64,000 bases of DNA from Vitrella brassicaformis CCMP3155 (Eukaryota; Protista; Chromerida): assembly GCA_001179505.1 (NCBI GenBank), contig CDMY01000275.1, forward strand, positions 494,295-558,294. The letters are read 5' to 3'. Both the position numbers and the translations under genes were made by a program. Numbering within the stretch: the stretch's first letter is position 1; each line of letters begins with the position of its first letter. This document shows positions 8,445 to 46,249 of the stretch, in pieces. The notes below the pieces were generated by a model, which did not search any database, was not told the DNA's origin, and saw nothing but the letters and a program-made list of their open reading frames with translations.

Positions 8445-8985
8445 GGGCCACGCCTTCATAGGCGGGGATTTCGTCGATATAGACGGAGCACGCCATCTAT
8501 ATAGGTCCGACATGCCCATGTAGGCCCCAGACGCGCCTATAGGCGGAAGTAGAGGCGGAACTATAGGCGGAAGTAGTGCCACATGCCGGCGCAATGCAGC
8601 CGCGCCTATATTGGCGCGTTTGGCGCGGATGTGGACTTGGTTTGATAGACTTATTCGAAATTATAACTCGTGAGACAAACATTCATTCATCCATCACTGC
8701 ACAGGCCATGCGTCTGAGCTGGTTCATGCACGCTCCCCTCTCGCTCATGCAGGCTACGTGTCTTTTTGTCTGTGCTAAACCTCTTCTCTCTGTCTCTCTA
8801 CCAGAACTTCTCTTCAGCGAAGGGGTACACCGGTGGGTGGAAGTGAGTGTGTCGATTGGACGCTGTCCTTTGGCAGCACGCAGGAGGGAGAGGTGACGCG
8901 GAGGGGCTTTGGAAGGGTTTCTTGGATGAGACGTGCGCCTCTGTCTTCCTGCATGCGCTTGCCGCGTTTAAGGTTTAAAGGCTTA
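8445..8985 (-). repeat. Dispersed repeat, inverted copy of 16335-16675, with degenerate TTTAGGG-like end
   Basis: 8835-8925 is the reverse complement of 16405-16480, and 8455-8540 is the reverse complement of 16575-16675. It ends in gtttaaggtttaaaggcttaggg. Confidence 0.7.
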
Positions 8986-11394
8986 GGGCAGGTAACTTGA
9001 TCGGCGGCTTGAACCAGGCCGTCGCTGGTATAGCTGATGTAACGTGTGCTCTAACGTTGCGGCGACATAGCTGATCGTGTGCTCTAACGTTGCGGCGACT
9101 GCAAGGCAGATAGCCACATCCGAGAGAGGATTTCGTCACCTCGGACCAAAGCATCTACTCAGGTATGTGATCATGAGCACACGCTCGTCACGCTAGCCTT
9201 CCCGGCATGCTCGGTTTTGCTCCTTTCCACAGAGTGCTGTGTCCATCGTCCACTCTCTCACTACCAAGGCTTGTGTGGCCGTCTATCTTGGTGCATATGC
9301 GATGCTGTATTCAGACATTCTCAGCGTCCCAGTGTTGACGTCGCGTGCTAATGTACCTGTTTATGACATCCACAGGAGCGCAGACTGCCACCCGACTGAC
9401 TGGTCCACACTACACCAACCACGCGACCTGCCAACCACGCTGTCTGGCGCACCATGCACACTTGGCTGTCTGGCTTATGTCTCGCTGTGTGATGTGTTGT
9501 GTTGTGACGCAGGGTGGGTGTCCTGTCACTGAGTGAGCTAACCCGCATGGGAGGCTGAATGTGGGCCTCACTCACATAGGGTACGTCACCTCACCCCACC
9601 CCACCCCACCACTCACACACACATGTGGCGGTGTACATGGGTGTGGACGTCTGGTNNNNNNNNNNNNNNNNNNNNNNNNNNNNNNNNNNNNNNNNNNNNN
9701 NNNNNNNNNNNNNNNNNNNNNNNNNNNNNNNNNNNNNNNNNNNNNNNNNNNNNNNNNNNNNNNNNNNNNNNNNNNNNNNNNNNNNNNNNNNNNNNNNNNN
9801 NNNNNNNNNNNNNNNNNNNNNNNNNNNNNNNNNNNNNNNNNNNNNNNNNNNNNNNNNNNNNNNNNNNNNNNNNNNNNNNNNNNNNNNNNNNNNNNNNNNN
9901 NNNNNNNNNNNNNNNNNNNNNNNNNNNNNNNNNNNNNNNNNNNNNNNNNNNNNNNGACCATTACACGGATCACTAGACGGAGTCGTTTGACGCGAGCTAT
10001 GCTAGCTTTTTCAAAAAACCCGTGGAAAAAATTGCATCCATTGCCCACACGATTCTCAGCACACCATGTCGGTAGCACCGTTTTCAAAACCTGGAGAAAG
10101 AAGGGGGAGGGGGTTACCTATTTTCCCCCAGTCGAGAATCGGAGTTAGAGATTCGTCAAACGGATCCCCGCGCTCCGGAGCGAGAGGCCTCTCGCTCCCG
10201 AGCGAGAGGCGAATGGCTCCGGAGCGAGACCTGGCGCTCCAATTGGCCACTGGCCCAATATTCCTGCCATTTTGCTTCATCCCGAAGTCACAAAATATTG
10301 AGTTTGCGAACTTTTCCCTACTTAGCGTATTTTCAGTGTTTCTGGCCACTCCCAGACCTTTGGTCGTCTGTAGCCTTCACTCCTATACGCTGCAAGCCTA
10401 TCCAGTCGACCACTTCTGTAGGAGGTCACCGATCCCGTGTGAGTGGTGAGGTCCGCGTCTCACCACCACTTCTTACTCGCCTCAAGGCACATCAACTGAT
10501 TCCCTGCCCGGAGAGAGGGGCCACCCCAATAAGCCTGAGGCACAGGGCGCCATGAAGTGTGAGTAATCCCCCAAGATGGCTCCCCTCCTTCCGTCTGGCA
10601 GGTGGGCCTTCGGCCTGTCTGTCTGATGGACCTTCCGTAAGTTGCCTTGCCGAGGATTAGCCGGAGCGCGGTGCTACGTGCGGAGGGCAGCCGCGACTCA
10701 ACACGGATAGGGGGCACACTCCAGCACACTACCCGAAGCCCTGATGTTGTCTATCTGTGCCTACTGCGCATAAGCCGTAGAGGCATACCAACACATGTCT
10801 CACACCCTACCGCCCATGTGGACGGATATTTGAGGAGGAAACTAGTCTGTATGACCCCGGAGAGCGTGAGAGAGAGTACAGTTACTCGTTAATTAACAAA
10901 GGAGAGGAGAGAAGCTGACTGAGCTCGTGGTGCGAAGCACCATCGAGGAGGGAATGGAGAAGGCCCAAGCGGCCTTGGCTGGCTAAGGAAATATCCCCTG
11001 GCAGACCGCCACAGGGGCAAGTATGGACGGACTGGGTCATTACGCCAGTTCGGTAAGAAACGATACACTGCTGACAAACGTATGAGCACGATCCNNNNNN
11101 NNNNNNNNNNNNNNNNNNNNNNNNNNNNNNNNNNNNNNNNNNNNNNNNNNNNNNNNNNNNNNNNNNNNNNNNNNNNNNNNNNNNNNNNNNNNNNNNNNNN
11201 NNNNNNNNNNNNNNNNNNNNNNNNNNNNNNNNNNNNNNNNNNNNNNNNNNNNNNNNNNNNNNNNNNNNNNNNNNNNNNNNNNNNNNNNNNNNNNNNNNNN
11301 NNNNNNNNNNNNNNNNNNNNNNNNNNNNNNNNNNNNNNNNNNNNNNNNNNNNNNNNNNNNNNNNNNNNNNNNNNNNNNNNNNNNNNNNNNNNNN

Positions 11395-11520
11395 ACAATC
11401 GCCCCAAGTTGCAGTCGGGCAACTCCCAGGTGTTGTCTTCCCCGAGTAGATCACTGCACGGATTGACGCACGTGGTGCGCTCTACAACGTCAAGAAGCTG
11501 CAGGTCCTTGTCAGGGTAAT
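11395..11520 (-). repeat. Diverged duplicate of the GH3 gene 3' end
   Basis: Translates as LQLLDVVERTTCVNPCSDLLGEDNTWELPDCNLGR versus MPLLDVIELNTCLNPCSDLDGEDNTWESPDCNLGRS at the GH3 C-terminus. Confidence 0.8.
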
Positions 11521-11546: not shown

Positions 11547-14339
11547 TCAGGATCTTCCTAAGTTACAATCGGGCGACTCCCAGGTGTTGTCTTCCCCGTC
11601 TAAATCACTGCACGGATTGAGACACGTGTTGAGCTCAATAACGTCAAGAAGTGGCATGTCATTCCGAGGGTGCGTGTCCTCGTAAGAGAGGCCATAGCTG
11701 TAGGGGAATCGCGGCAGCTGCCCGTCGCCCTTGCGGATGTTGAACTGGCATGGGTGATCGGGCCATTTCATTGATAACCGGCCGGTGAAATTCACCGCAC
11801 CGAAGGGGAGGTCGGTCAGCCCGGGGCCCGCCTGTTTGCATGGCAGCCAGGCCGCGACGAAGGCGTCTGAGAGATTTATTTCTTCGTTGACGTACAGCGG
11901 CCTGCCTGAGTACAAAATGGTAATTATTGGGGTCGTGGGTGCGCTGTCGCGTGCATGCTTCAGGCGGATCAAGTCCTCTGGGTACGTATGCCTGCCGGAT
12001 CTGGACCTGTGCCACATGCAACCAGAGTACGACTCATCAACAGCTACACGGCGAAGAATGTGTGCGTACTGGTTTCGATGGTGCATGAGGCTTTCTCCAT
12101 CATCCAGGTCGCCATAGACCTCGGCGTAGGGGTCTTCGGCAATGACATGTATAATGACGTCGTAGTCGCTGTTCAGCATGCCTTTGCCTTCCTCGTCGTC
12201 AACCACCGTGTAGTTATTTCTGTTGCTGTGCTCCTGGAGGGCCTTTATCAGAGAGACGGCATTGTCCACCGTATCGAAAACGTCGTCGTTGACTGGAGGG
12301 GGGAATGACAGCAAGCAGAGAGAAACATGATCCAGGACACACTCGTTGCTCATGCGTTTTGAGCTAACCCTGTCCCTGCCACCCCATGGTCCACCCCCCA
12401 CACGCGAGATGGATCCATCGCGCCTTGCCCATCACCAACACCCTCATGCCGGCCCGTGGCTTCAGCGGCAACACACCGCCGTTGTTCTGCTCAAATACCA
12501 CGTACCGAAACACTTTAGACTTGCTCTCTGATCTTTCTCCTCTCACCTTAGCAGCACCGCCGACTTTTGTACGGTTTCCCTGGCGACGGCCGTGTGCTCT
12601 GGGCTGCCGATGGCGGTTATGTTGACGTCGTCTATTCTGTCCAGTACGTTGACGCCAGGTCCGATCATGCCTAGCCGGGCCTTAAGACGCAACACACGTC
12701 TGGCGGCGTCGTCGATGCGCGACTGCGGTACGGTGCCATTTCTGACAGTCTGGAGAGTGTTCTGGATAAACTTGGAGTAGTGATCGCCACCCACCGTGGA
12801 GAGGAGGAACATGTCAATCTGATAAGGTGTCAAGTGAGGGAGTGACAATGAGTGCGTGTGTGAGACAGGAGGATGCGTGTTGTACGCCCGCGTTGATGCC
12901 TTGTGGGCAGCTGTCGGATGTGCACGAAGGTATGTCAGCGTGGGCGTTCCAGTCGCTCATGACAACCCCATCGAAGCTGAAGTGGCCCTTGAGGATCTCC
13001 GTCAGGTAGTGGTAGTGCTGGTGCATCTCTATGCCGTTGATCTCGTTGAATGAGGGCATCGTGCTCATCACCTCTATCAGGCAGGGAGGCAGGCACAGAT
13101 GCTTTGGCCAAACAGTACTTGTGTACACCCTCGCTTTGAAGCACCCTATGNNNNNNNNNNNNNNNNNNNNNNNNNNNNNNNNNNNNNNNNNNNNNNNNNN
13201 NNNNNNNNNNNNNNNNNNNNNNNNNNNNNNNNNNNNNNNNNNNNNNNNNNNNNNNNNNNNNNNNNNNNNNNNNNNNNNNNNNNNNNNNNNNNNNNNNNNN
13301 NNNNNNNNNNNNNNNNNNNNNNNNNNNNNNNNNNNNNNNNNNNNNNNNNNNNNNNNNNNNNNNNNNNNNNNNNNNNNNNNNNNNNNNNNNNNNNNNNNNN
13401 NNNNNNNNNNNNNNNNNNNNNNNNNNNNNNNNNNNNNNNNNNNNNNNNNNCTTTGCCACAGGGCCTCTCACTTTGGGCGGCTCGGGCCACAGGGCACACT
13501 ACCTACATCCACACAATCGATGCACAAATGTATCAGCATGTATGCACTGACCTTGGCCCACACAGCTGGTGTGGGGTGACGCCAGTGGTCTTTTTCTCTT
13601 CGGTAGCATGCAGAGTGCATAGCTGCGTGCTGTAGTCGTAGCTGAAGACGATGCAGGCCTCATATTGCTGACAGAGGGCCTGGCACCTAAATGGTGTCGC
13701 AACAGATCCCAGACTGATAACATCGACAGGCGTGGCATAGTAGTGGCAGCCCCGAGCGATACTGCCATCCACAAAACATAGCATAATCACACTGTTATCT
13801 TTCGAAATGTTCCTGATGTCACATACCAGCCCCCGGTCAGCTCCTCTCTCCCGCCTTCTGTGCTTCGCTGTCCGTCCGAGGTGCAATATTTGGGCCCTGA
13901 TGTAGCGAAATTGCTCTCTTGCTTATCATGCTGAACGTCGGTCAGCTTGTCGGTGAGGAGGACGCATCCCTGGCCGTACGAGAAGGTGAACGCCTCACAT
14001 TCTTCCCAAGCCCAGCACTTCATCTGACAGTGACGGGGGGTTGGCGATGCCCATCATGGCGTCAGTGGAGATATTGACTTCGGGTGATACATAAAACACC
14101 CCTTGTTCGTAACAACCGGCTGAACAAAGAGTAAAACAAGTCGGTTGAGTTGTCCTTTCTCGGTTGCCTCGCTTACATCCTTCATCGTCGACATAGTCAG
14201 GGATGACAGGGCTGCGGGTCACTTGCGTCTCCGACCGATCAACACACAGACAGAAAAGAAGGGCTGCAGGCAATTGCAGCCGACGGTTGGACGTCCAAGT
14301 TCTACCACGGTTGGACGTCCAAGTTCTACGCATATACAT
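11547..14339 (-). CDS. Secreted GH3 beta-glucosidase/exo-beta-glucanase with N-terminal Apple/PAN domains; one frameshift; part of the GH3 N-domain lies in the gap
   Basis: GH3 motifs: TMPSFNEING, FDGVVMSDW (nucleophile Asp), SRIDDAARRVLRLK, ARETVQKSAVLL, AEDPYAE (acid/base Glu), ILYSGRPL, DAFVAAWLP, FTGRLSMKWP, FPYSYGLSY. Two Apple-like repeats: CQMKCWAWEECEAFTFSYGQGCVLL...SGPKYC and CQALCQQYEACIVFSYDYSTQLCTL...LCGPRS. Hydrophobic N-terminus AALLFCLCV. The G6 run at 14035-14040 shifts the frame. Confidence 0.85.
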
Positions 14340-14745: not shown

Positions 14746-16121
14746 TCTTGCTGTCCCCTTCCCCTCTCGGGCAAATGAAACATCATGCTGTTTTAACCGT
14801 AACACTCGTGTATGCGTCCGTGACACTCATACAAATACAGTCCCATGAGCACGCAGAGTCAAACGCTCAAGGGGAGGAGGGATCGATGAGACATGTATTA
14901 GCGACCCACCATCGGGCCGTGTCGTGGCTAGTCGTGGCCCGATGGTGGGTCTTCTTGTCGTGTGCAGTCAGGCGTGAGTGTGTTCCACGGTGCGCGGCAA
15001 GAGTGAGGCCGCCCAGAGGCCGCCACACCGTTCATTCCCCCCTTCCCCAGAGACGAGGTCTGGGGGAGGGGCCCGTATTCACCCCACTAGGTCTTTTCCT
15101 CGCCACACTGTGCCTTCCATGTGCCTGTATGTGTGTGTGTGTGTGTGTGTGNNNNNNNNNNNNNNNNNNNNNNNNNNNNNNNNNNNNNNNNNNNNNNNNN
15201 NNNNNNNNNNNNNNNNNNNNNNNNNNNNNNNNNNNNNNNNNNNNNNNNNNNNNNNNNNNNNNNNNNNNNNNNNNNNNNNNNNNNNNNNNNNNNNNNNNNN
15301 NNNNNNNNNNNNNNNNNNNNNNNNNNNNNNNNNNNNNNNNNNNNNNNNNNNNNNNNNNNNNNNNNNNNNNNNNNNNNNNNNNNNNNNNNNNNNNNNNNNN
15401 NNNNNNNNNNNNNNNNNNNNNNNNNNNNNNNNNNNNNNNNNNNNNNNNNNNGCCTTCCATGTGCCTGTATGTGGGTGTGTGTGTGTGTGCGAGGGCGTAT
15501 GTGTGTAGGGGTGTGAGTGGGTATGGGTGTGGGTATGCGGGTGAGGTATTGGTATTCTTGGGTGTGTGTGTATGTGTGTGGGGGTGTACGTGTGTGTGTA
15601 GGGATGTGAGTGCGGGTATGGGTGTGTCTTGCCGCCCTTTTGCTTTTCCCTCCGGTGATATCTGTATGGGTGTGCCCTGGGAGTGTCTACGGGTCGGCCG
15701 CCTGCCGCCCCTCTCGCCGTAGAGACCGGGGTGGCGGTGTGCTCGACTTTCATACACCCCCAGCACCCCGTGCGTAGTTTTTACAGGGGCGTGTTTGCGT
15801 GTGACTGGTCGATTTGCACTAGCTGCCCACCTGGGGATGGGCGGTACGTACGTATGAAGTCATGGTGCACCACGCGCGCACGCACGCCGCCTTCAGGTTG
15901 CTGGGGTGGCGCGTGTGCGACGTTCTGTGCCTGCTCGTATGTTGCCGTCGTTCGCAGCGCATTGCATATCCTCCTGTTTGCTGCATCTGCCCTCTGCGTG
16001 CTGCGTGTTGCGTGTCCGGGTTGCATGTTAGGGTGCGTGTTTCATGTGGGACGGACCGAGAGGGGACTTGGCCGTCAGGCCGCCTAGGGTGCTCCCTGAA
16101 ATCGCTGCTGCAGCGACGGAC

Positions 16122-16334: not shown

Positions 16335-16675
16335 AGTTAATACCCTAAACCCTAAGCGACAAACGAAGGTTTGGCGAACAAGCATCCCAACCAAGAAACC
16401 CTTCCAAAGCCCCTCCCCGTCACCTCTCCCTCCTGCGTGCTGCCAAAGGGGAGCGTCCAATCGACACACTCACTCCCACCCATCCCTTCGCAGCGTGTTC
16501 GCCTCTACTTCCGCCTACATTCATGCGCCTATATGGGCGGATCTTTCGTCGTCTCCATTCATGCGCCCATAGAGGCGCGTCTGGCGCCTACATGGGCATG
16601 TCGGACGCGGGCTTACTTATCGGGCTCTATAGGCTGGCGTCTCCGTCTATATCGACGAAATCCGCGCATATGAAG
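16335..16675 (+). repeat. Dispersed repeat, inverted partner of 8445-8985
   Basis: Reverse-complement similarity to 8445-8985, with indels. Confidence 0.7.
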
Positions 16676-16960
16676 AGAGCACTGCCTCATCTCAGATGAA
16701 GAGGCAGCCTTCGAGCAGCATCACTTTGACCTTCGAACTGCCAGTGTGGGTACTGGGGGCTATCCGCATGGTCGAAGCTGGCTTGAGGAGGTTGCTGTTC
16801 ATTGTTACTGAAAACGGAGCAGTAACGGTAGAGACCGGAAAGGAAGGCTACGTTCTTCTTGAACCAAGACACTTAGCAACCAACACCGACTGGTATTCTT
16901 ATGTCCTGCTTGCCCACACAGTAGGATGATGCAGCGAGGGCTGCGCGCGTCTTCATCACC

Positions 16961-18958
16961 ATGTTCACTATTCAAAGAAACAACGCTTTCCTTCTTGTCG
17001 CATTGCCCCTGTCTTTATTCGGAATACAATGCCTCATCGCTGGACAGGTGTAATATTATATATGTTATTCGCAATTGAACTGTGTGTGAGTGTGTCCTCA
17101 GGGTGCTACGACATTTGAAGACGTAGTGAGTGTTGATGAGGGCTTCTACATGAATGACTGGAAGTGCTTCTGTCCTGGCCTTGGCGGCTCCTGCTATGGC
17201 GAGTGCGGCCGAGGGTACGACGCTGCTGAGCTAACCAGCAAGGACACGTTCAGGTACGGGCGTTTCGAGACGAGTTTGCACCGGGATGATGTCGAGGGAA
17301 CAGTAGCAACCTTCTTCCTCTTCAAGAATGACAGCGACAAAGTCCGTGGGGCGTTGTGGAAGGAGATAGACTACGAGGTGCATGGCTTGGGCGGCCATGC
17401 CGCGACGCCCATCCAGACCAACATCATAACGGGCAACTTCAAAGACCGCAACAGATCCCCGCAGTACCTCCCAATGCCGGGTCACCCCTCACAGGGTGAG
17501 GCTCAGGCGGATGCTGTCAAGAGAGGTTTCCATCACATTGCGCTTGAGTGGACCCCCGACTATGTCGCATGGTACTTCGATGGAAGACGCGTTCGGCTCG
17601 ATACGGCCTGTGGCGCTGGATTGCATTGCAGTCCCCAAACCTCTGAGTTGACGGACCCGATGAATCTTCGTCTGTCCCTGTGGCCATGCAACCCCCACTT
17701 CGAGTGGGCCGAGTCGTGGGCCGTCAGGTTCGATCCCGCCTCGGTCCCTCTTACCGCGTATTTCGATTATGTCAGGACATACGACTACGACCCGATCACC
17801 AAGGGTGTATCCAATATCGTCTTTCCCCCAGGAATACCGTTTCCTGCCCAATTCGCTTGTATCAGGTTTCATTCCAAAGTGGACAGACGAGTTCGGGACG
17901 CTCAATGCGACTCGATGGGAGGCCAGCACTCACACCTTCGACGCACAATTCAAGCCGAATAATGCTGCCATTGTCAAGGCGGAGGAGACTGACCCGCTGT
18001 CCGACGGGTCGTACCTTTCTTTGTCCATTACAGACAAGAACGCCACAATCGATGTCCTCCCACCCGACTTCCAGAGGCCCACGTACGACGAATTCAACGT
18101 TAAGCCACTAGAATGGGTCTACGATGATTGGAACCCGCCATCCAAAAGCTATTTGCTGGAGAGCGAGGTCTGCAAAGGCGAAGGTGTCACGAGTGAGCCG
18201 GGCAAGCGATACGAGGGAGGCTGGGTAACCTTCACGACTGTATTGGTTGAGGGCCTGCCCAACTTTGGCAATACCCGGATCGATGAGACGGACGCTGTGC
18301 AGAAGTGCACGGCCATGTGTGTAGACCACTACAACAGCAGCGAGTGCCGCTTCTTCACGGTCTTCTCTGTCGAGTCCACCCAGTACTGCAGCGGCTTCAT
18401 GACCCCCGAGAGAGAGAGATCAGCGATAGCTCTGCCGTGGCGGGTTTCATCTGCTCACAGCCTGACTCACAGGCCAAAACAGTTGAGCCCGCAGCCGACG
18501 GTCATATGGAGTTAGAAGCGGAGGCCGAGGCGCCAACCGCTTCTGCTGAAACGGAGACAGAGGCGTCGACCTCTCCTAAACCCCTGGGGGAGCCGGAGGA
18601 GGAAACAGTGGTACCAGACACGCCCGAGGTGATCGATGAGGCCTCCGATGAGTTAATCTGGGCAGTCGAGGGGCAGGATAGCACTAGCCTTGTGCCCGTC
18701 GGCAGCCCGCTTGAGCCATCCGAAGGAGAGGCAGCTTCAGTGATCAAGGTGGAACCAGCTGACATGAGCGAGACAAATGAGGTTTCAACAAAAACAGAAG
18801 GCGACATTCCCATCTGGCTTATTCTCGTTGTCATTGCTGCTGCTCTACTCCCGGTGACGGGCCTGGTCTTCTTCTTCTTCGCTAGAGACAGGAGGTCCAA
18901 AAGCGGGCCCGAAGCAGCGCAGCGCACTCACACCGCGACAAGTTGGGTATCAGTGTGA
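16961..18958 (+). CDS. Circularly permuted GH16 beta-1,3(4)-glucanase (licheninase-like) + Apple-like domain + acidic stalk + TM anchor; (GA)n frameshift
   Basis: Signal peptide MFTIQRNNAFLLVALPLSLFGIQC; AELTSKDTFRYGRFE, WKEIDYE catalytic motif at 17363-17377, QTNIITG, FHHIALEWTPDYVAWYFDG, LRLSLW, FDYVRTYDY, then WTDEFGTLNATRWEASTHTF. Later CTAMCVDHYNSSECRFFTV, an E/T/P-rich stalk and TM IWLILVVIAAALLPVTGLVFFFFA. The frame changes at (GA)6, 18408-18419. Confidence 0.88.
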
Positions 18959-20934
18959 GCGGCTTCCCTTGGCGAACGCATCCGAATGAGCCGATGCGTG
19001 TACGTGTGTATGCTTGCTTTGCGCGACACGCCATCCTTCGTAGGTGTTTTTTGCCTCATGAAGCGAAAGCAACAAAAGCGGCTGGCCGGTCCACCGAGAC
19101 ATGTTTTACCTCGTCCGGTTGTATGTGTGTATGTGTGTGTGTTTTTTTTTCTGTTTCTTAAGACGCACACAGACCTTTTTTTTTAAGACGCACACAGACA
19201 CCCGTGGACAACACTACACATACGCAAACAGCAAGACCGCCTCACGTCCAGTGCAAGCGTGCGTGTCCAACCGATCATGTGTGTGTCGAGTGAAGATGTT
19301 TCGATCCTTGTCGAGGCAAGAGGATGGATGGTACGGCTCATCCACAGCTAGCTATGGGCTTGAAGGGGTGACGGTTTTTATCCCAAGACGCAAGGGTTCA
19401 AAGGGCCTAACCACACATCATAGACACACGGCGAAGGCCGACAGGCTTCATCACAGACAAATCCTCAGTGCAAATCTGAACAGCTTCACAGGGAAGGGGA
19501 GTTTAATCCAATGCAGTCAGTGCGACATTTCGCCGGCCCCTAAAAGAGTGGCGCATACACAGGCACTGCACCGTCACAAACGCATGCTGGCATCAACATT
19601 ACAGACACGGAGACATTTCCCACACACAACAGACACACAGATACACCAAGTCAGACCTGCCTGCGCGCCACCCGCCCTGTACCTCGCTGTGCGCACCTGC
19701 AATAAACAATGACCACGGACACAAACCTCTCAGCACAGTGACCTGTTATGCCTTTCGGACGAAGCGTATGTGTGCCCTTCCGCTGCACATGAAGGACCTA
19801 CACTCATCTCAACGTCCACAATACACATCAGCAGCCACACGGACAGACAGACAAGCAGTCAACCACGCTCACAGATGGCAACATACATACGAAAAGACAG
19901 TGGGCTTCACAAAGAGACGGCCCCTCTTCTCGTGCGTCCTGGCTGCGTCCACCTGTCTGTCTGTCTGTCCGTCAACCACAGTGTGTGCAGAATGGGTCAG
20001 GTCGGCGTATAATGGATGACGTCACAAAGCGCAATCGTGTTGACGATGCCCTGAGCCGGCTCACCGATCAGAATAATCGGAGTAGCTGGAAGGGATGTCA
20101 TTGATCATTAGTTGTGCACACAAAAGAGACAGACCAGACGCCGATTCGGTGTTCATTTTTTGCTATGTCCCGATAATATGAGGGCGGCATCCGTCACGAG
20201 TCAGCTAGTTCCCGTGTGTGCACCAGTCCCCCCACCTCCCGGCCGTCCCATCTCTCCTTCGTCAGTACGTCACGTGGTCGCCTTAATGTCCATGCAAAGA
20301 CGGCCTTTGTGAGGCACGCCGGACACTTCAGTTCCGCATCGCGTCTGACGTACATCGGCATCGCCTTGTCCCCGGGAAAAAGAGGAAAAGCAACCCGGCC
20401 GACGGCGAGAACAGGAGAGCGAGCAAATTGAAATAGATGAAGAGGATTGAAATATCAGCTTGATGTCCAGACACGCATCAAAACGCCACATGAGTAACCG
20501 ACACCGGTTTTCGCCATTTTTTCGCCAACGAGAGGGCCGATTCAAATGGGGAGCGAACTCGTTTCTCGCAGGGTACCCCGCTGCCGGGCTGTGAGATGGC
20601 GGCTGGACCTGAGTTCTGAATGTGTGTGTCATGTTGCATGTCTCACGCTTCTTTGCAGTGTGCGACATGTTTTCACAGTCGACGAACGTTGTCCATTGTT
20701 TCTGCATGTATTGTCTCCCTTCGCTTGCTTGATACGAACTGATGCTTAGACGAACTTCGTCGCCCGTTTCATGCATCTACTTAAAAGCACAATGCACATA
20801 TATTTAAATCAGATCTAAGAGAGACCGCCTGGGAAAAAAGTTGGAGGACACTTTCACCCTTTAGACTAACTGTCTCTGTAGCCGTTGCTTTCAGGGTACC
20901 CGTTTCAGCTCAATGGATCAAAGCTGAGAGCAGA

Positions 20935-25999: not shown

Positions 26000-28900
26000 A
26001 TGAGGTGTGTCGTGCCGCAGCTCCTCTTCATCGTATGGGTGTGTACCGCCCAGGAGCCAGGTCAGTGAGACAGAAGCAAGGAACAGCGGGCCTGGTCGAA
26101 AGCCTTGTTTTGCTCCTTCGTAGGATGCCTCCTCGAGGAGAACGTAGATTACGCAGCGGGTGCAGACATCGAGGCGGCTAGTAGTGGATTCCCTTCTCAT
26201 CTGCGCTGTGCCGACTGGTGCGCAGTCACGGAACGCTGCGAATACTGGGTTCACGTGGGTTTCGGAGACGACGGGATGTGCTTTCTCAAGACTGCCCGAG
26301 AGCCAGTGATGCCCAGGGCAGCAAACCCTGACGAAGGCTTACAGGTGACGGCTGGCAACAAAGCATGCGGAGATCCTTCCAGCATGGTCGCGAAAGGTTC
26401 GTATGCTTGCACAAGATTGGGGGGCTGCCTTGTGATTGGTCGCTCGTAACCACTGCAAATGCTTTTTGTTTGATTCTCTGCAGGTTGTATTTTGGAGGAA
26501 AACGTTGACCGTGCCACAGATTCGGATACGGACCTTAGGGCGGCAATTAGTGGCTTTCCTGAATATCTCAGTTGCGCCGACTGGTGCGCTGGCACAGAGG
26601 GCTGCGAATACTGGGTTCACTTGGGTACTGGAGACGATGGTTCGTGCTGGCTCAAGACAGCCAGAGACCCTGCTGTTCATCCTGCGCCGGATGAGGACGG
26701 CAGGAAGTTCACGGCTGGCAGCAAAGCATGCGGAGACCCGGAAAATATGTTGAGAATAAATGGTCAAGGTATGCCTAACAGGTCAGAGAAAGCGTGTGAT
26801 TGGTATGTCTTAATCGCTACAGATGACAGCTCCGGCTCGGATGAAAGTGCTGGGTGTTTCTCTTCGAAGACAGCATCCAATGCGCCAGTAGTTTACCATC
26901 GGCAGTGGGTGATAGGCAACGACGTACATCTGTATTGGATCTTCGCTTTTGTTTTTAGTTGTGACGCGGTTCAAAAGGGATATCAAACTGCAAATTGGTG
27001 CCAGGTCCAGTGTATGGGCAATCCCGACTGCAACGCTTTTGTCTACCAGCTAAAGAAGGGGCACTACAAACATACCGGTAGGTTCACGCCGCATACGGGA
27101 CAGCCACCTGAAAACGTACCTCGTCCCCTGTGCAGACCCTAACAGCGTGAACCAGGTCGACTGCTTCCTTCTTGCCGACAAGGGCGACACATTCACTCCG
27201 GGGAAGAAGGAAAGGAACAAGGACCTGGAGTTCACATTCGGCCCCAAATACTGTCCGGGAGAGGGTAAGCATCTAGGGCCTGACAATCGCCAATTAGACC
27301 GTGGATGGAAAACTATTTCTGGGTCGTCTCGTCCATCAGAGCCCCCTTGGGACAAGCCTATTGAAGAGTGGCCTCTGCGGATCAATGCCGGCGGCCCGCC
27401 CCACGAAGATGTGTACGACAAGGAAGTGGCGACAGGACAAATACTTCACGGAGCAAGCCGGCCCTACGGGTCTCTATTATGAAAAGAAATTCGTAAGCCG
27501 TCACATAAGCGCGCTTCAGAAACGAGCGCTTTGTACCGTTCGTTTCTGAATCAGACGAAGTCTCGTCCTATGGAGCCCCTCGCCCACACGGGTCGTGAGG
27601 ATTTTGTCTACTCGATACCAGTGGAGTCCCCCGTCGCCGTCGTCGTCAATCTCTACTTCGCTGAGGTAAACAGACGTGTCCTCGCTAATCAAAGCATCGT
27701 TGGTGACAAGGATATGTACGATAGGTCATCCACAAAGGGAAACCGGGACAGCGTGTCCAAAACGTCTTCGTAGAGAACAACCAAGTGCTCAGTGATTTTG
27801 ACATCTTCGCCACAGCTGCGGCTCTCATCGCCCCCGAAGGCACCAAGGTATAAAAGACCGGATTGACCCAGAACACCTATCTGCAACCTTCAATTGTCTT
27901 TTCGCCTGCCATTCCTTCTGAAAGGAGGTCAGGTATATATCAAAGGACACGAGAACGCAGGATGTCGTTGGCAACTCCACCGTGACTGTCTACAACGGCC
28001 CAGACGAGCCCTTCGGCACCATCGTCAAAGTCGAGACGCCCATGGCGGTAATCGAGGACAACAGCATTGACATCAGAGGCGATGCGGTGAAGGGCAAGTC
28101 ATGGCTCACAGCCGTCGAGGTCTACGCCACAGAAGTGGTGCTGGATATCACCGTCACGGCTGATAGCCCCACACAGACGGAACCGTTCACCGCAATTGCA
28201 TTCGCACCGGGAACGCCCACACAGGTGTGTCAAATCGAAAGAGTCCCAGCACTCCACTCAACAACCCTCCTGCCTCTCTGGCTCACGGTGTGTTCTTGCC
28301 TGTCAGACGCTCACGATTGAGAACAGGGACAGCCGCGACGTGAAGCTTCCCATATCATTCGAGGGTGGCAGCGATGCCCAATTTACTTTTGTGCCCACGG
28401 AGGTCATACTCAAGGCGGGAGAGACTTCCACCGTCCACATCACGTGGACTGGAGCCGATACTGCGGATGGCCCTGTCGTCACCTCGCTCAAGCTATCCAA
28501 ACACGTAACAGAGAAGGGATATCCAGCGAGTGTGCCGACGTGTTCCTCTCTCTGTCGCAGCTTCGTGTGTTAATTTCAGCCGATGTAATCAGTAAGGAGG
28601 CCATGCTCGACGTGCAGAGCGGCATACAGATGGGTCTCATCACTCCTCTGAGCTATGGGGGCAGCGGCAAGGGCATCCAGGCGCCCCTGTCGTCAAAGAG
28701 AACAGTCACCATCACACGGGTAGTGGCGTTCGGCTCGGAGGATGCTATCCAGGTGTCCATTCCTGGCACATTTACCGTGGAGGGCCCAGCGGACATCACC
28801 TTTAAGGAGCCGCGGACATCACCTTTAAGGAGCCGCTAAAGGTCACGTCCAAGGCGGCCATCCCCATGCGTATCGGATTCGCTGCCGACAATGCTGGGGA

Positions 28901-41084: not shown

Positions 41085-44000
41085 CAAGTTCAGACCCATT
41101 TGGCCGTAGGTCAATGAACTTCGAGCACAAATAGTTGTGTCTCGCTGCTGGCAGGGGTTTGGTCAAGATGTCGGCTGGGTTTTCCTTCCCGTCCACGCGA
41201 CAAATCTTGAACCCCTCCACTTCGACTGTCTGTCTCAGCGCCAGATAGTCAAGACGAATGTAGTTCTTCCCTTTCGTCTTCTTCTCTTGGGGATGGGCCG
41301 TCAGCGTCCTCGCTGCGTCATTGTCCGTGTACAACTCCACCGAACTGACCTTCCTCCCGAGTTCCCCCAGGAACTCCTTGAGTGCCAGCAGGTGTTGCGA
41401 TGCATTGTACAGCGCGACATACTCGGCCACCATTGTGCTCCCCGTTATGTAGGTCTGCTTTTTGCACGATCACGAAACCAGACAGTCATTGAGGAACGTC
41501 AGGTATCCACCTGTACTCGTTCCGTCCTCATTGTCGCCGAGACTTGAGTCGGCGTAGCACGTCAGCCTGATCTCATCTGTGCCAGACCGCTTGTACACAA
41601 GGCGAGCATCCATTGTGTCCTTCAGGTAGCGCATGAGGTGCATGAGTGCCTTCCAGTGCCATTGGCTCGGGTCATTGTTGTGCATGGCACACTCCTTGAC
41701 GGCGAATGCGCAGTCTGGCCTCAATGCGCACGCCTCGTACGTCACTGAACCGACGCCTTCTCTGTATGGCAGTCGATTCATGCGCTCTCGCTCTTCTTGT
41801 GTCTGAGGAGACTGGTCCTTGCTCAGTCGGTGCGTCTGCGGGCATGGTTGACTGACGGGCTTAGCTAGTAGCATTCGGTACTTCTCGAGCATCTTCTTGA
41901 TGTATGGTGCATGCGAGAGTGCCATTTCGCCCTTGTCAGCGTCATAGTCGACATCCAGTCCGACAAATGACTTGATCTTGCCCAGGAAACGTGCCTTGAA
42001 GCGAGTGAGGATCATCTGCATGAACCACTCTGGGTCATTGTCGCCTTTGGTGGGAGCCCAGAAGATGTCGTCAACAACGACAGCCACTCTGAGGTCTCTC
42101 TCCCGCAACACAAAGACACATGGATCACTCACGAGCTGCTCAAACATGAGCTGCTTCAAGTAGTCCGTCAGGCAGATATTCCATGCGCGCGGTGCTTCCT
42201 TCAGCCCGTACAGAGCCCTCAGGAGGAGGATCACCATTCCTACCCCCTCTGGCCCGTAGCCCGCTGGCACCGCCATGTAAACAGGCGTGTCCAAAGGCGC
42301 ACTCAGGAACGCATTGCTCACGTCGAGATTGAAGATGTCGCGCCCCTCCTGCACCTCCAGTGCAAAGAGTGTGCGAATCGTCGACAGTGAGAGTGTGGGA
42401 GCATACGTCTCCCCGACCTGGTTCGGATCCTGTGCGAATCCCTTGATCACCAGTCGCGCTTTGTAGCGTCCGTCTGCCTTGATCTTGAACACCCACTTAC
42501 ATGGAATGACCTTTCCTTGCGCTTGAGAGGCAGCAACCAACACAAAGACACCCTTGTCTTTCATGGCCTGCAGCTCCTCGTCGATGGCCGCGTGCCACTT
42601 AGCTTGCTCCTCTGGTGGGAGGCTCGCTATGTCCTCGAACGTCAGTGGCTCAGTCGGCTTGGCAGTGTCAGTGTCATTGCCTCCCTCGGCATTTACAAAC
42701 GCCGACGACGTAAACACGAAGTCACTCGCGTCGTTGGGCAGACCGACAAAGTCCTTCAGGTCAACCCAGAAGGAATCAGTGTCCTGCTCTGCATCCGACC
42801 ACTGCTCTGCTGCGGGTTCCGCCCGCTCATCGACGCAAGGATGGCAGTTCTCGTTGGCCTCTTCGTAGGCTTCTGGTGGCAGGATGCCCACCATGGGCTC
42901 CTCTGTCTGCCATGTGTGACTACAGTGAGAGCATTTGTGAGCCCTCCTTGGCTTCCACAAATCGACAGCGAGTCTCTGACGTTTCTTCACCAGATGGACG
43001 AACCGACCCTCCTGGCCAGGCTCTCGAACCACCTTTGAGCAACGGGGACAGGAGAGTGCATCATCACAGCGCCCGTCGTGAGCTCTCTTGGCCGAGAGAG
43101 CCCCGAACATCGCACCGTCCGACGCTCTTCCTCCAGCCTCATCACTCATCGGCTGCTCGCCTCTGGTTGGACTGCTTGGAGGTTGCTGAGGCAACGGGGG
43201 ATCTTGCAGTTCTGCCTGCTGCTCACCCTCTCCATTGATGGGCGGATCAGACGGGAGCATCTCACGAAGAGACGCCTCACTCATCGGATCTCCCTCAACA
43301 GCATCCTTTTGCATCGTGTCAGTAGAATCCACGGCAGCAGACTCGCCTCTCGGGCGGCGTTGTCGCTTCTGCAACTCTGGCGGCAAGCCCTGCCAACGCT
43401 TCGGTCTCAGTCCGTATTGCCCCGATACGTCCTTCCTTGACCGTATAGTCGTGTTGTCGACGAACTCCGGCATCCCCCCTCTGAGCCATGCGTCCTCGCT
43501 CGATGGCTCTTGCAGAGGCCCAGCAGGCTGACCAGTGTCGCTCTGATCCAACCTGGGTTCCTGGGTGTCAGGTGTCCCATCCTGTGCTTGGTGCGGCAGA
43601 GGCTCAGGAGACACGCCAACAGGCCGATACACGTCGCCCGTCACCTCCCCCTCTCGAGTGTGGAGGTGTGGATCTACTGATCGATGCAGCTTTCCTGTGC
43701 GGTAGAATGAGCAGTTATCAAAGACTGTCTCCTGTACCCTCGCAGTAAAAACTCGCCTCTTGTGAGGCACGTAAACCAAGCATCCATCTTTTGTGCTGGG
43801 AGCGTAGCCAAGGTACACACCTTTTTGTGCCTTGGGTGTGAGTGGACCACCCGGCCTCGGACCCCCGGAGAGTGGTTTGGGGATGTGCATGTAGCACATG
43901 CACCCGAACACATGCAGCCCGGTTTTACACAGCAGTGTAAAGTTGGGCTTCTCGCCATGATACAACTCGTGCGGGGTTTTCTCATGCTCATTCGCCGAAT

Positions 44001-44585
44001 GAGGCATGATGTTCCGAACAAAAACGGCGTGCCTGAAGGCATATGGCCAGAAAATCAACGGCAGAAAGGCATGAAGAAGCATCGCCATCGCGATGTTGCT
44101 GATTGATTGGATGGCTCTCTCAGCAACTCCATTTGACTGCTGATGGTGCGGGACGATCTTCTGAATGACGACACCTTGCTCGACAAGGAAAGCTTGCGCT
44201 TCTCCTTCGACGAGCTCCTTTGCATTGTCCGCTCGGAACGCTCTCGGCTTGCCCTTGGCAGACACATCAGCGAGGAGGAGCCGAAGGGCTCTCACAGCGT
44301 CTGATTTGTGCACGAGAGGGTAGAACCAATGATAGCACGTTGCGTCATCCACGAAGAGTACACCATAGCGGTAGTTGTGCAGAAAGGGTGCGCGAGGCAG
44401 ATCTGTCTTCATGTCCCCATGCACCAAATCCAACGGTTGAGTGGCTCGTGACTGAAGCGGCACCGGTTTGTGAGGTTTGCGGCGACTCTTGCTCAGCACG
44501 CAAGGCTCACACGGGCCATGGATCTCAATCTCACGCTCAGTGAGTGGGGTGATTGTCAGCCCCTCGACCCGTCCATCGGCCATGG
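41085..44585 (-). mobile_element. Ty1/Copia LTR retrotransposon pol (GAG-pre-integrase end, integrase, RT, RNase H); gag/protease and 5' LTR absent
   Basis: CEPCVLSK, LDLVHGD, VLFVDDAT, RADNAKE, HQQSNGVAER (integrase); KWVFKIK, YKARLVIKGFAQ, LDVSNAFL, LLRALYGLKEAPRAW, VVVDD (RT); YADS, STGGY, AEYVAL, YTDNDAA, ENPADILTKPL (RNase H). IN precedes RT, as in Copia. One in-frame TGA at 41470-41472 in LVS*SCKKQ, where W is expected. Confidence 0.95.
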
Positions 44586-46249
44586 ATGGCACGACCCTAG
44601 GGCAAAACTTAATCCTGGCAAACCCAAACTCTTTTTTCTAGCTTTTCCTCAGTCCATCTTTCCTCTTCCACTCGCAGCAGTGTTTGTGTTCCATCAGACA
44701 AACATCAGGTCAATTTCGGGATGCTAGAACTGTCACAGGAAAGAGAGAACATTCTCAATACTTTTTTCCTCCTCAATCAACTGCCCGATTGTGTCTCTGA
44801 AATAAAAAACTCTCGCACCGCAAACCTGAGTCATAAAATCAAACATTTTCACAATACCTAGACAACCCAAACTAGTCAGCTTTCAAAGGTTGGTTTCTCG
44901 AAAAGTTAGAAAACCTAACTAGTTAGCTTTTCTAGGTTTCGCACTTTCCGGGGGGGGGAGGGAGGAGGGCCTATTGGCCTACCGCCACTACAAGATAGTC
45001 TGAAAGTTAGATAAGCTGAGTACTTAGCTTTTTCAACTATCCATTCATCCGTCTCTCCCCCTTTCTCTCCACCCACCCACAAAAAAATCCTAGATAACTG
45101 ACTGGTTAACCCACTTTTTTTTTACTCCAAGTAGTCAATACACCGACACACACATCTCAACGAATCAAAGCTTTCGTAGGGTTTTAGGGTTTCTCGTAGG
45201 GTTTTTCGCGCCCGTGGGGGGAGCGCGCCGAAGGCGCGCGTCCCCCGCGGCCGAGAAACCCTAAACCCTACGCGAAGAAACCCTAAAACCCTACGAAATT
45301 TAGGGTTTAGGGTTTCCACGGGAGGGGGGCTTAGGTTAGGTTGGAGGTTAGACAAGCTGACTAGTTAGGTTTTCTGACTCTTCATCCATCTCTCTCTCCC
45401 CCCTTCTGTCCCGCTTTCCCTTCCCTTTCCCTCTCCCAACCCCCACCCCTCCCCCCCACCCCCCCCCTAGAAAAAAGCCTGAAAGTTAGATAAGCTGACT
45501 AGTTAGGTTTTCTAACTCTTCCCCTCTCAACACCCCACCTGTCCGCCCACCTACATAAAGTAGAAAACCTAGAAAACCTAACTAGTCAGCTTTCACATGT
45601 TGGTGTCACGACAAGTCAGAAAACCTGACTAGTCAGCTTATCTAACTTTCAGGATTTTTTGTAGGGGGTGGTGGGGGGGAGGGGTGGGGGTTGGGAGAGG
45701 GAAAGGGAAGGGAAAGGGGGACAGAAGGGGGGAGAGACAGATAGATGAAGGGTTAGAAAACCTGACTAGTCAGCTTTCACAACTTGATGTCTCTGCAAGT
45801 CAGAAAACCTGACTAGTCAGCTTATCTAACTTTCAGGCTTTTTTCTGGGGGTGGGGGTGGGGAGGGAATTGGGGTAGGGTTGGCAGAGGGGGTGGAAAGG
45901 GGGAAGGCACAGATGGATGACGAGTTAGAAAAGCTAACTAGTCAGCTTATCAACTTTCCGACTATTTTCTACGGAGGGTGGCATGCTAGGATGACTTTGC
46001 TTGGAGAAGCTGGGGTTCCCCGTCCTATGAGCCGACAAGTCGACAAATATGAGGCCTTCTGCAGGTTGTTGTGCGGAGAGACATTGACATGCTTGAATTG
46101 CTCGCGTGTGAACAAATGTTTTCTGTTTCGTTCTTATGATTTACAGGAAACCTACGGCTTTAGCGTGAAACACATATGACCTTCATGAGACCTGACAAGT
46201 TCTGCGCACTCTCAGGATTAAGTTTTGCCCTAGGTTCGTGCCATGAGCC
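44585..46249. mobile_element. Non-autonomous TIR DNA element (~1.66 kb) with subterminal palindromic motifs and internal telomere-like repeats
   Basis: atggcacgaccctagggcaaaacttaatcctg (44585-44616) is the reverse complement, with one mismatch, of 46214-46245. More than 12 copies of aaaacct(a/g)actagtcagct in both orientations; TTTAGGG/CCCTAAA repeats at 45181-45320; no long ORF. Confidence 0.75.

What the first reader, a model, noticed from the sequence alone, without database searches (positions are those of the whole stretch)
16961..18958. Naturally circularly permuted GH16 (Fibrobacter-type) in a eukaryote, membrane-tethered
Seen: the catalytic domain starts at AELTSKDTFRYGRFE, and the segment normally found at the N-terminus of licheninases (WTDEF...RWE...TF...LSLSIT) comes after the EIDYE core and the FDYVRTY strand. 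Established: the Fibrobacter succinogenes 1,3-1,4-beta-glucanase is the classic natural permutation of GH16 with this order. Inference: horizontal acquisition from a bacterium, followed by intron gain and addition of a signal peptide, Apple-like domain, stalk and TM helix.
Basis: partly seen in the sequence, partly recalled or inferred. Interest (0 to 1): 0.75.

Follow-up and report, generated by a model that had tools for sequence, protein, structure and literature searches.

The report
Permuted bacterial-type glucanase gene, decaying copy
This is a gene of the alga Vitrella brassicaformis for a Fibrobacter-type, circularly permuted family-16 beta-glucanase, probably acquired from bacteria and since multiplied in this alga; this copy is frameshifted before its membrane anchor and looks like a transcribed pseudogene.

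Summary
Window 16961-18958 (+) encodes a GH16 domain in the circularly permuted order of the Fibrobacter succinogenes 1,3-1,4-beta-glucanase. That enzyme is the best solved-structure match by sequence (E 5e-28, collinear across the permutation junction) and by predicted fold (TM 0.85-0.88). Canonical Bacillus licheninases align over only about 190 columns.

The organism is Vitrella brassicaformis CCMP3155. The gene is already deposited as CEL99215.1 / A0A0G4EPM7, "GH16 domain-containing protein". It is one of about 12 Vitrella gene models for this domain. No other eukaryote appeared among the best hits; all other relatives are bacterial, at 30-37% identity. A bacterial origin is therefore plausible, but no tree was built.

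Two GT-AG introns are real. Intron 1 is spliced in three RNA contigs, and both positions are shared with a paralog.

"Membrane-tethered" does not hold for this copy. A (GA)6 tract (18408-18419) shifts the frame, so the last Apple-domain cysteine, the stalk and the membrane helix are out of frame. This is identical in seven independent sequences. In addition:
- a Cys53-to-stop allele occurs in 3 of 7 sequences;
- one sequence has a further 1-base insertion;
- all three RNA contigs retain intron 2.

Most likely this is a recently decayed, still transcribed paralog. Interest is moderate.

The parts
16824..16960 (+). 5' untranslated region (minimum extent)
   Evidence: RNA-derived contig L001 matches the window from 16824.
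16961..17047 (+). Exon 1: signal-peptide-like N-terminus, MFTIQRNNAFLLVALPLSLFGIQCLIAGQ
   Evidence: Same start as the deposited model CEL99215.1. That it is a signal peptide is judged from the sequence by eye.
17048..17101 (+). Intron 1, 54 nt, GT-AG, phase 0
   Evidence: Precisely removed in RNA contigs L001, L003 and L004. Same position (IAGQ|) as the 171-nt intron 1 of paralog P0001.
17102..17804 (+). Exon 2: Cys-rich N-terminal piece (C51, C53, C60, C64) followed by the GH16 core from YDAAEL to DYDPITK
   Evidence: In the model the Cys-rich piece has pLDDT below 50 and the core above 85.
17171..17173 (+). Codon 53. It is TGT (Cys) in the window, L004, L005 and L007, and TGA (stop) in L001, L003 and L006.
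17363..17377 (+). Catalytic motif E117-I-D119-Y-E121 (ExDxE, without the beta-bulge residue)
   Evidence: Aligns to E56-V-D58-I-E60 of the Fibrobacter enzyme. Invariant in 87 homologues.
17572..17631 (+). 60-nt 'intron' of the deposited model CEL99215.1, which removes the conserved strand WYFDGRRV; probably spurious
   Evidence: P0304 lacks these 20 residues. RNA contigs are collinear with the genome here. The strand is conserved in all homologues.
17805..17865 (+). Intron 2, 61 nt, GT-AG, phase 1, exactly at the permutation junction (DYDPITK-G|FIPKW). It is retained in every RNA contig seen.
   Evidence: Needed to join the two frames. Same position in paralogs P0001 (108 nt) and P0003 (58 nt). 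Retained in L001, L003 and L004, which have intron 1 spliced.
17866..18032 (+). Start of exon 3: the permuted segment (strands that are N-terminal in canonical GH16), FIPKWTDEF...SYLSLSIT
   Evidence: Strands 235-242, 252-254, 268-272 and 283-291 of the model have pLDDT 71-97. Structural match.
18033..18170 (+). Linker with the conserved motif YDEFNVKPLEWVYDDWNPPSKSYLLES
   Evidence: Conserved in P0001. Modelled with low confidence.
18171..18407 (+). PAN/Apple-like domain with its first five cysteines (C366, C411, C415, C424, C438)
   Evidence: No Pfam hit in this copy. hhalign to the Pfam-positive PAN domain of paralog P0134 gives probability 78%, E 1.8e-5. Foldseek best hits are factor XI and prekallikrein apple domains and AMA1, E 0.03 to 1, on a model with pLDDT 65.
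18408..18419 (+). (GA)6 tract where the frame is lost; (GA)5 would restore the paralog-like reading TPEREISDSS...GFIC
   Evidence: Identical in the window and in L001 and L003-L007.
18513..18515 (+). Stop codon of the frame that carries the GH16 and PAN-like domains (...PTVIWS*)
   Evidence: The deposited protein ends here.
18419..18958 (+). Out-of-frame remnant with no stop for 180 codons: sixth PAN cysteine (GFICSQ), acidic stalk, membrane helix IPIWLILVVIAAALLPVTGLVFFFFA (18806-18883), short basic tail, stop at 18956-18958
   Evidence: ORF 18305-18958. The motifs SLVPVGSPLEPSEGEAA and IPIWLIL...GLVFF are conserved in P0001. The membrane helix is judged by eye.
18959..20226 (+). 3' untranslated region (minimum extent)
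   Evidence: L001 is collinear with the window to 20226.

Best explanation
The region is the nuclear gene CEL99215.1 of the chromerid alga Vitrella brassicaformis. It encodes a family-16 glycoside hydrolase with the natural circular permutation known from the Fibrobacter succinogenes 1,3-1,4-beta-glucanase.

Origin (inferred). The permutation was inherited, not invented here. An ancestor of Vitrella most likely acquired a permuted GH16 gene from a bacterium. The gene then gained spliceosomal introns, a signal peptide and a Cys-rich N-terminal piece. In one subfamily it also gained a PAN/Apple-like domain, an acidic stalk and a membrane helix. It multiplied to about 12 gene models.

Mechanism where a copy is intact (inferred from the family). 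Such a protein would be a retaining endo-beta-glucanase or transglycosylase, with E117 as nucleophile and E121 as acid/base. It would be displayed on, or released from, the cell surface and act on a beta-glucan of the wall or the surroundings.

This copy (shown). One extra GA unit in a (GA)6 tract puts the sixth PAN cysteine, the stalk and the membrane helix out of frame. A Cys53-to-stop allele and a 1-base insertion segregate at the locus. The transcripts assembled from three RNA data sets keep intron 2, which truncates the jelly roll.

Conclusion (inferred). It is most likely a recently inactivated, still transcribed paralog. At best it yields a soluble 479-residue protein without a membrane anchor.
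For: Identity and permutation.

Organism and deposited model: the neighbouring GH3 exon is identical to a Vitrella MMETSP protein apart from a 63-nt intron and one residue. The 90% cluster of the window's own ORF contains CEL99215.1 of V. brassicaformis CCMP3155.

Family and distribution: the HMMER search of 1.84 billion representatives gave 12 hits at E <= 1e-30. Apart from the window's own ORF (P0002) these were Vitrella proteins and three bacterial proteins. All eukaryotic names retrieved were Vitrella. Named bacterial relatives belong to Chitinispirillales, Fibrobacter, Cellvibrio, Bacteroidales, Marinimicrobia, Ignavibacteria and KSB1.

Lineage-specific shared features absent from bacteria: the C-x-C...CGR-x-Y N-terminal piece, a 13-residue insert and a Cys-pair loop.

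Introns: intron 1 is spliced in three RNA contigs. Both intron positions are shared with P0001, and the junction intron also with P0003. The deep paralog P0134 has its introns elsewhere.

Decay: (GA)6 is identical in seven sequences. TGA replaces TGT at codon 53 in three of seven. One sequence has an extra C. Intron 2 is retained in all RNA contigs, while paralog P0003 is fully spliced in two of the same RNA samples.
Against: - In the window's allele the 479-codon frame (with intron 2 removed) is open and the catalytic triad is intact, so a secreted enzyme cannot be excluded.
- The frame behind the frameshift has stayed open for 180 codons and keeps motifs shared with P0001. This fits a very recent frameshift but also continued use.
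- Intron retention is read from assembled contigs, not from read counts, so a spliced minority form may exist.
- Horizontal transfer rests on distribution and similarity ranks; no tree was built.
- Absence from Chromera and other alveolates was not tested directly.
Confidence: 0.7

Rival explanations
1. Working secreted enzyme. The frameshift is an accepted truncation, and the gene makes a soluble 479-residue permuted GH16 with a partial PAN domain, as the deposited model implies.
For: The frame is open from 16961 to 18515 after removal of introns 1 and 2. The catalytic E-D-E and most substrate-contact residues are conserved. The locus is transcribed. The soluble paralogs P0003 and P0129 show that anchor-less family members exist.
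Against: A stop at codon 53 occurs in 3 of 7 sequences and a 1-base insertion in one. Intron 2 is retained in all three RNA contigs, which truncates the fold. The truncation leaves the PAN-like domain with five cysteines, one unpaired.
Confidence: 0.2
2. Full-length membrane-tethered enzyme. The frame would be restored by slippage at the (GA)6 tract during transcription or translation, or by repeat-length variation between cells.
For: The downstream frame is open for 180 codons and keeps the stalk and membrane-helix motifs of P0001. Dinucleotide repeats are prone to slippage (general knowledge).
Against: All seven sequences, including three RNA-derived contigs from different samples, carry exactly (GA)6. 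Other disabling variants segregate at the locus. No frameshift-stimulating element was looked for or seen.
Confidence: 0.05
3. Vertically inherited eukaryotic GH16 that became permuted independently, or bacterial contamination of the assembly.
For: No tree was built. Eukaryotes possess several GH16 subfamilies (PMC6827312).
Against: The protein is collinear with bacterial permuted GH16s across the junction and scores far above canonical eukaryotic GH16s. Contamination is excluded by spliceosomal introns confirmed in RNA, by a 558-kb scaffold and by the flanking eukaryotic genes and Ty1/copia element.
Confidence: 0.03

Closest known systems
Fibrobacter succinogenes 1,3-1,4-beta-D-glucanase (PDB 1MVE, 1ZM1, 2R49, 3H0O, 3HR9, 3AXD/3AXE), the natural circularly permuted jelly roll
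   Same: Same order of strands, with a collinear alignment across the junction (E 5e-28; model TM 0.85-0.88; about 30% identity). Same ExDxE motif. Conserved equivalents of E11, F40, N44, W54, E56, D58, E60, R137, W141, W148 and F152 (the roles of these residues are from my memory of the 1MVE/1ZM1 papers).
   Different: Encoded in a eukaryotic nucleus with two introns. It has a Cys-rich N-terminal extension, a 13-residue insert, a disulfide-type loop and a PHFEW insert. It carries the substitutions Y42F, E47D, N139S and W203H. It is followed by a PAN-like domain instead of the bacterial basic repeat tail. This copy is frameshifted.
Uncharacterised permuted GH16s of bacteria (Chitinispirillales, Marinimicrobia, Ignavibacteria, Cellvibrio and others), often with a T9SS sorting tail or malectin domains
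   Same: Same permuted domain at 30-37% identity, including the THTFD motif (H at the W203 position).
   Different: They use bacterial secretion and anchoring modules (PF18962, PF13860, PF11721) and have no introns. They lack the Vitrella-specific inserts.
Vitrella paralog P0001 (718 aa)
   Same: 61-65% identity, the same two intron positions and the same domain order.
   Different: P0001 reads straight through APEHEIDDPTAMGGVVCSG into its stalk and membrane helix. The window copy is shifted by one GA unit at that point.
Bacillus licheninases (CAZy GH16_21; 1GBG, 1MAC, 2AYH) and their engineered permutants (1CPM, 1CPN, 1AJK, 1AJO)
   Same: Same fold and ExDxE motif. The engineered permutants align over the full length (TM 0.80).
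   Different: The canonical enzymes have the other strand order and align only in part (E about 1e-7; 185-200 columns).
PAN/Apple-domain surface proteins of Apicomplexa (microneme proteins such as the Sarcocystis lectin SML-2; AMA1)
   Same: The order signal peptide, PAN-like domain, acidic stalk, single membrane helix and short tail is found in the intact paralogs. Weak fold matches to AMA1 and SML-2.
   Different: There is no detectable sequence homology to these proteins. Here the PAN-like domain is attached to an enzyme. No microneme-targeting or rhomboid-cleavage motif was tested.
[quoted passage not shown] 2010, cited in PMC4176579)
   Same: A precedent for a permuted GH16-like fold in eukaryotes.
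   Different: It is a different family; no similarity to it was found or tested here.

Membership tests
Glycoside hydrolase family 16 (Pfam PF00722) | Profile match above the curated cut-off | tested here: met
   61.8 bits against a cut-off of 22, E 7e-17.
Glycoside hydrolase family 16 (Pfam PF00722) | Beta-jelly-roll fold | tested here: met
   AlphaFold model with pLDDT 83.7 and pTM 0.84. There were 231 PDB matches at E <= 0.001, and the 50 best listed are all GH16 structures.
Glycoside hydrolase family 16 (Pfam PF00722) | Catalytic Glu-x-Asp-x(-x)-Glu on one strand | tested here: met
   E117-I-D119-Y-E121, invariant in 87 aligned homologues.
Fibrobacter-type circularly permuted GH16 | Strands that are N-terminal in canonical GH16 follow the C-terminal strand in one polypeptide | tested here: met
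   The collinear alignment to 1MVE/3AXD crosses the junction. Full-length structural alignment is obtained only with natural or engineered permutants.
Fibrobacter-type circularly permuted GH16 | Strict 1,3-1,4-beta-glucan 4-glucanohydrolase activity | not testable with these tools
   Eight of the twelve Fibrobacter residues compared outside the catalytic E56/D58/E60 triad are conserved; Y42F, E47D, N139S and W203H differ. Specificity cannot be read from this.
CAZy subfamily GH16_21 (licheninases) | Assignment by the CAZy subfamily profile or sequence-similarity network | not testable with these tools
   No CAZy or dbCAN subfamily models were on hand. PMC6827312 describes GH16_21 as bacterial plus a few Chytridiomycota and does not mention permutation.
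PAN/Apple domain (PF00024, PF14295) | Profile match | tested here: not met
   No PAN hit at E <= 10 for this copy or for P0001. PAN is found in paralogs P0134 (1e-10) and P0132 (2e-5).
PAN/Apple domain (PF00024, PF14295) | Six-cysteine pattern and apple fold | tested here: inconclusive
   Five cysteines are in frame and the sixth lies behind the frameshift. hhalign to the PAN domain of P0134 gives probability 78%. Foldseek best hits are apple/PAN proteins but at E 0.03 or worse, on a model with pLDDT 65.
Type I membrane protein | Signal peptide, ectodomain and membrane helix in one reading frame | tested here: not met
   The ectodomain frame stops at 18515 and the membrane helix (18806-18883) is in another frame, in all seven sequences.
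Horizontally acquired bacterial gene in a eukaryote | Integrated in the host genome with host-type gene structure | tested here: met
   GT-AG introns spliced in RNA, a 558-kb scaffold, and eukaryotic neighbours.
Horizontally acquired bacterial gene in a eukaryote | Patchy eukaryotic distribution with the nearest relatives bacterial | tested here: met
   This holds only within the databases searched.
Horizontally acquired bacterial gene in a eukaryote | Nested within a bacterial clade in a phylogenetic tree | not tested
   The script machine was lost and no tree tool was available.
Pseudogene (unitary, transcribed) | Frame disruption relative to intact paralogs, plus segregating disabling variants | tested here: met
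   The (GA)6 shift, the TGA allele and a +1 C allele.
Pseudogene (unitary, transcribed) | Relaxed selection (dN/dS near 1) and no protein product | not tested
   There are too few differences and no script machine. No proteomic data were searched.

The most novel reading that the evidence does not exclude
The (GA)6 tract could be a slippage-prone switch that toggles this paralog between a secreted form and a membrane-anchored form. The 180-codon downstream frame would stay open because it is still used. More broadly, the Vitrella family would then be a lineage-specific set of surface enzymes built like apicomplexan adhesins (PAN domain, acidic stalk, membrane helix) around a bacterial permuted glucanase.
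Probability: 0.05. Interest if true: 0.7.

Novelty: new member of a known kind. Interest (0 to 1): 0.4.

Why it matters
If the family-level reading is right, a free-living photosynthetic relative of the apicomplexan parasites acquired a bacterial beta-glucanase that was already circularly permuted. It kept the permutation, multiplied the gene to about a dozen copies, and fused it to PAN/Apple, trefoil, stalk and membrane modules of the kind that apicomplexans use in their surface adhesins.

That would be a clear example of horizontal transfer followed by domain shuffling in alveolates. It would also be a lead to the unknown beta-glucan chemistry of the chromerid cell wall or sporangium.

For this locus the practical message is corrective. 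The deposited model contains a doubtful intron. The membrane anchor is not in frame. The copy is probably decaying, so functional work should start from the intact paralogs P0001 and P0003.

Tried and rejected
- I looked for a third intron that would join the PAN-like frame to the stalk frame. The only GT...AG candidates are 24 or 36 nt, a multiple of three, so they cannot correct the frame. The paralog P0001 has no intron there. Rejected.
- Assembly error at the (GA)6 tract is rejected, because six independent contigs are identical to the window there.
- From codon usage I first thought the window might come from Chromera velia. I rejected this after the GH3 neighbour and the cluster of the window's own ORF both pointed to Vitrella brassicaformis CCMP3155.
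- Pfam did not find a PAN domain in this copy, and a profile of the PAN-like region found nothing in PDB sequences.
- Rfam and tRNA scans of the window found nothing.
- Literature searches for a permuted GH16 in Vitrella or other eukaryotes found no report. They found only the TOS1 precedent and the GH16 subfamily paper, which does not mention permutation.
- A metagenome scan with the window protein returned only three loci at about 35% identity.
- The planned distance tree and dN/dS calculation could not be run, because the script machine was lost.
Full report
**Gene model**

The region holds a three-exon gene on the + strand.
- Exon 1, 16961-17047, encodes a signal-peptide-like N-terminus.
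- Intron 1, 17048-17101, is 54 nt, GT-AG.
- Exon 2, 17102-17804, encodes a Cys-rich piece and the GH16 core.
- Intron 2, 17805-17865, is 61 nt, GT-AG, phase 1.
- Exon 3 starts at 17866.

The frame that carries the enzyme stops at 18513-18515 (...PTVIWS*). The acidic stalk, the hydrophobic helix IPIWLILVVIAAALLPVTGLVFFFFA (18806-18883) and the short tail that ends at 18958 lie in a different frame (ORF 18305-18958). The two frames meet at a (GA)6 tract, 18408-18419.

**The permutation is real**

- Pfam finds Glyco_hydro_16 at 61.8 bits against a cut-off of 22.
- The best solved structures by sequence are the seven entries of the Fibrobacter succinogenes 1,3-1,4-beta-glucanase (six distinct sequences), E 5e-28 to 4e-26. 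The match is a single collinear alignment from YDAAEL through EIDYE and FDYVRTYDYDP into KWTDEFGTLNATRWE...THTFD.
- Canonical Bacillus licheninases reach only about E 1e-7, over part of the domain.
- An AlphaFold model built on 87 homologues has pLDDT 83.7 and pTM 0.84, with confident strands in the permuted segment.
- Foldseek ranks the Fibrobacter chains first (TM 0.83-0.88, 264-277 columns). The engineered permutants 1CPM/1CPN come next (TM 0.80, about 260 columns). Canonical licheninases, Crh5, EG16 and XTH follow at 185-240 columns and TM 0.4-0.6.
- This is the pattern expected if the chain order is permuted and the downstream segment belongs to the same jelly roll.
- The catalytic residues E117, D119 and E121 (window 17363-17377) align with E56, D58 and E60 of the Fibrobacter enzyme. 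They are invariant in 87 sequences.
- The equivalents of E11, F40, N44, W54, R137, W141, W148 and F152 are kept. Y42F, E47D, N139S and W203H differ. The roles of these residues are from my memory of the 1MVE/1ZM1 literature.

**Organism and public record**

- The neighbouring GH3 exon (11547-12401, - strand) is identical to a Vitrella brassicaformis MMETSP protein except for a 63-nt in-frame intron and one residue.
- The 90% cluster of the window's own ORF contains CEL99215.1 / A0A0G4EPM7, "GH16 domain-containing protein" of V. brassicaformis CCMP3155, on a 558-kb contig.
- That model uses the same start and the same introns 1 and 2 as mine and ends at ...PTVIWS.
- It also removes 17572-17631, the conserved strand WYFDGRRV and the loop after it. 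RNA contigs are collinear with the genome there, so this extra intron is doubtful.

**A gene family, not a lone gene**

- An exhaustive HMMER search of 1.84 billion cluster representatives gave 599 hits at E <= 1e-3 and 12 at E <= 1e-30.
- Those 12 are the window's own ORF (P0002), Vitrella proteins and three bacterial proteins.
- Counting the window's gene, about 12 Vitrella gene models carry this permuted domain: P0001, P0003, P0004, P0129-P0134, P0196, P0286 and P0304. Some of them are fragments.
- They share features absent from bacteria: an N-terminal C-x-C...CGR-x-Y piece, a 13-residue insert and a Cys-pair loop. This points to one acquisition followed by duplication.
- The accessory modules vary between paralogs:
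  - PAN domains are recognised by Pfam in P0134 and P0132.
  - P0132 also carries a trefoil domain.
  - P0001, P0130, P0133 and P0134 have a membrane helix.
  - P0003 and P0129 are soluble.

**Origin**

- Every non-Vitrella relative for which a name could be retrieved is bacterial, and those whose sequences I read or aligned show the permuted order. The named groups are Chitinispirillales (Fibrobacterota; best hit, E 1.8e-44), Fibrobacter sp., Cellvibrio, Bacteroidales, Marinimicrobia, Ignavibacteria, KSB1, Calditrichota and Zixibacteria.
- Many of these carry type IX secretion tails.
- A pattern scan of JGI metagenome contigs found only three loci, at about 35% identity.
- Canonical eukaryotic GH16s are far more distant.
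- Contamination is excluded by the spliced introns and the eukaryotic flanks.
- Transfer from a bacterium is therefore the best reading. It rests on distribution and similarity ranks only, because the script machine was lost and no tree could be built.

**Introns**

- Intron 1 is removed precisely in three RNA-derived contigs from three samples: L001, L003 and L004.
- Both intron positions are shared with the gene of paralog P0001, where the introns are 171 and 108 nt.
- The junction intron is also the only intron of P0003 (58 nt).
- The deep paralog P0134 has its introns at other positions and none at the junction.
- This fits an intron-less ancestor with gains during diversification of the family.
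- Intron 2 lies exactly in the linker that joins the old C-terminus to the old N-terminus. This may be coincidence.

**The Apple-like domain**

- Pfam does not recognise it in this copy or in P0001.
- The cysteine pattern C366...C411-x3-C415...C424...C438...(C) fits PAN/Apple, and the domain aligns with P0001 and P0004.
- A profile of the three sequences matches the Pfam-positive PAN domain of P0134 (hhalign probability 78%, E 1.8e-5).
- A low-confidence model (pLDDT 65) finds factor XI and prekallikrein apple domains, S-receptor kinase, AMA1, the HGF N-domain and the Sarcocystis lectin SML-2 as its best matches, but at E 0.03 to 1.
- The label is reasonable but not proven for this copy.

**This copy is damaged**

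- P0001 reads ...YCSGFHAPEHEIDDPTAMGGVVCSG... straight into its stalk. The window would need (GA)5 to read ...YCSGFMTPEREISDSSAVAGFICSQ....
- The (GA)6 tract is identical in the window and in six independent contigs from JGI and Logan assemblies. It is therefore not an assembly error.
- Codon 53 is TGT (Cys) in the window, L004, L005 and L007, but TGA (stop) in L001, L003 and L006.
- L003 also has an extra C after 17700, inside the GH16 core.
- All three contigs that have intron 1 spliced, and so derive from RNA, still contain intron 2. Retaining it ends the frame at 17962 and removes four strands of the jelly roll.
- In two of the same RNA samples (ERR558152 and JGI 3300017297) the paralog P0003 is fully spliced at the homologous intron.
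- The frame behind the frameshift is still open for 180 codons and keeps motifs shared with P0001. The damage is therefore recent.

**Verdict**

The observed permutation is confirmed. The eukaryotic host and the bacterial-origin reading are supported, short of a tree. The membrane tether is ancestral for this subfamily but is not encoded in frame here. The locus is most likely a young, transcribed pseudogene.

The gene is already in public databases under an automatic GH16 label. I found no paper that describes a permuted GH16 in chromerids. I rate it a new member of a known kind, of moderate interest as a family and low interest as an individual locus.

Noticed in passing
window 11547-13886 (- strand): The divergent neighbour, about 3 kb upstream of the GH16 start, is a PAN-GH3 gene. 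It has a PAN_1 exon (13533-13886, E 9e-8), GH3 N-domain exons (12814-13128, 12543-12848) and a GH3 C-domain exon (11547-12401). Outside Vitrella its nearest homologues are bacterial GH3s with the ExoP C-domain, at 34-40% identity. It may be a second bacterial glycosidase fused to a PAN domain, next to the first.
   Followed up: partly
window 26492-27142 (+): A further ORF with PAN_4 (E 9e-10) and PAN_1 matches. PAN-domain genes seem to be common in this neighbourhood.
   Followed up: no
window 41470-44592 (-): A 1040-codon ORF of a Ty1/copia-type retroelement (RVT_2 at E 2.5e-43, integrase core, retroviral SH3-like domain).
   Followed up: no
window 8834-8931 and 16385-16482: A 98-nt inverted repeat, 94% complementary, brackets the PAN-GH3 gene and ends about 480 nt upstream of the GH16 start codon. 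ORF translations suggest that the repeated element is longer than 98 nt.
   Followed up: partly
window 17572-17631: The deposited model CEL99215.1 splices out 60 nt that encode the conserved strand WYFDGRRV and the loop after it. RNA contigs are collinear with the genome here, so this is probably an annotation artefact.
   Followed up: yes
window ~9650-9950, ~11100-11400, ~13150-13450, ~15150-15450: Runs of N (scaffold gaps). One lies inside the GH3 gene and one lies between the GH3 and GH16 genes. A 120-nt direct repeat (11398-11517 / 11552-11671, 82%) sits beside one gap and may be an assembly artefact.
   Followed up: no
P0132 (Vitrella CEM35548.1); P0014 (Chitinispirillales): Paralog P0132 combines the permuted GH16 with a PAN domain and a C-terminal trefoil (P-type) domain. 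The best bacterial hit, P0014, is a tandem of two permuted GH16 modules.
   Followed up: no
L001-L007 downstream of the gene (window ~19100-19700): The contigs fall into two types by the ORF called downstream of the gene: 203 codons in the window, L001 and L004, and 153 codons in L003, L005 and L006. This suggests two haplotypes or strains. The grouping does not coincide with the TGT/TGA split at codon 53.
   Followed up: no
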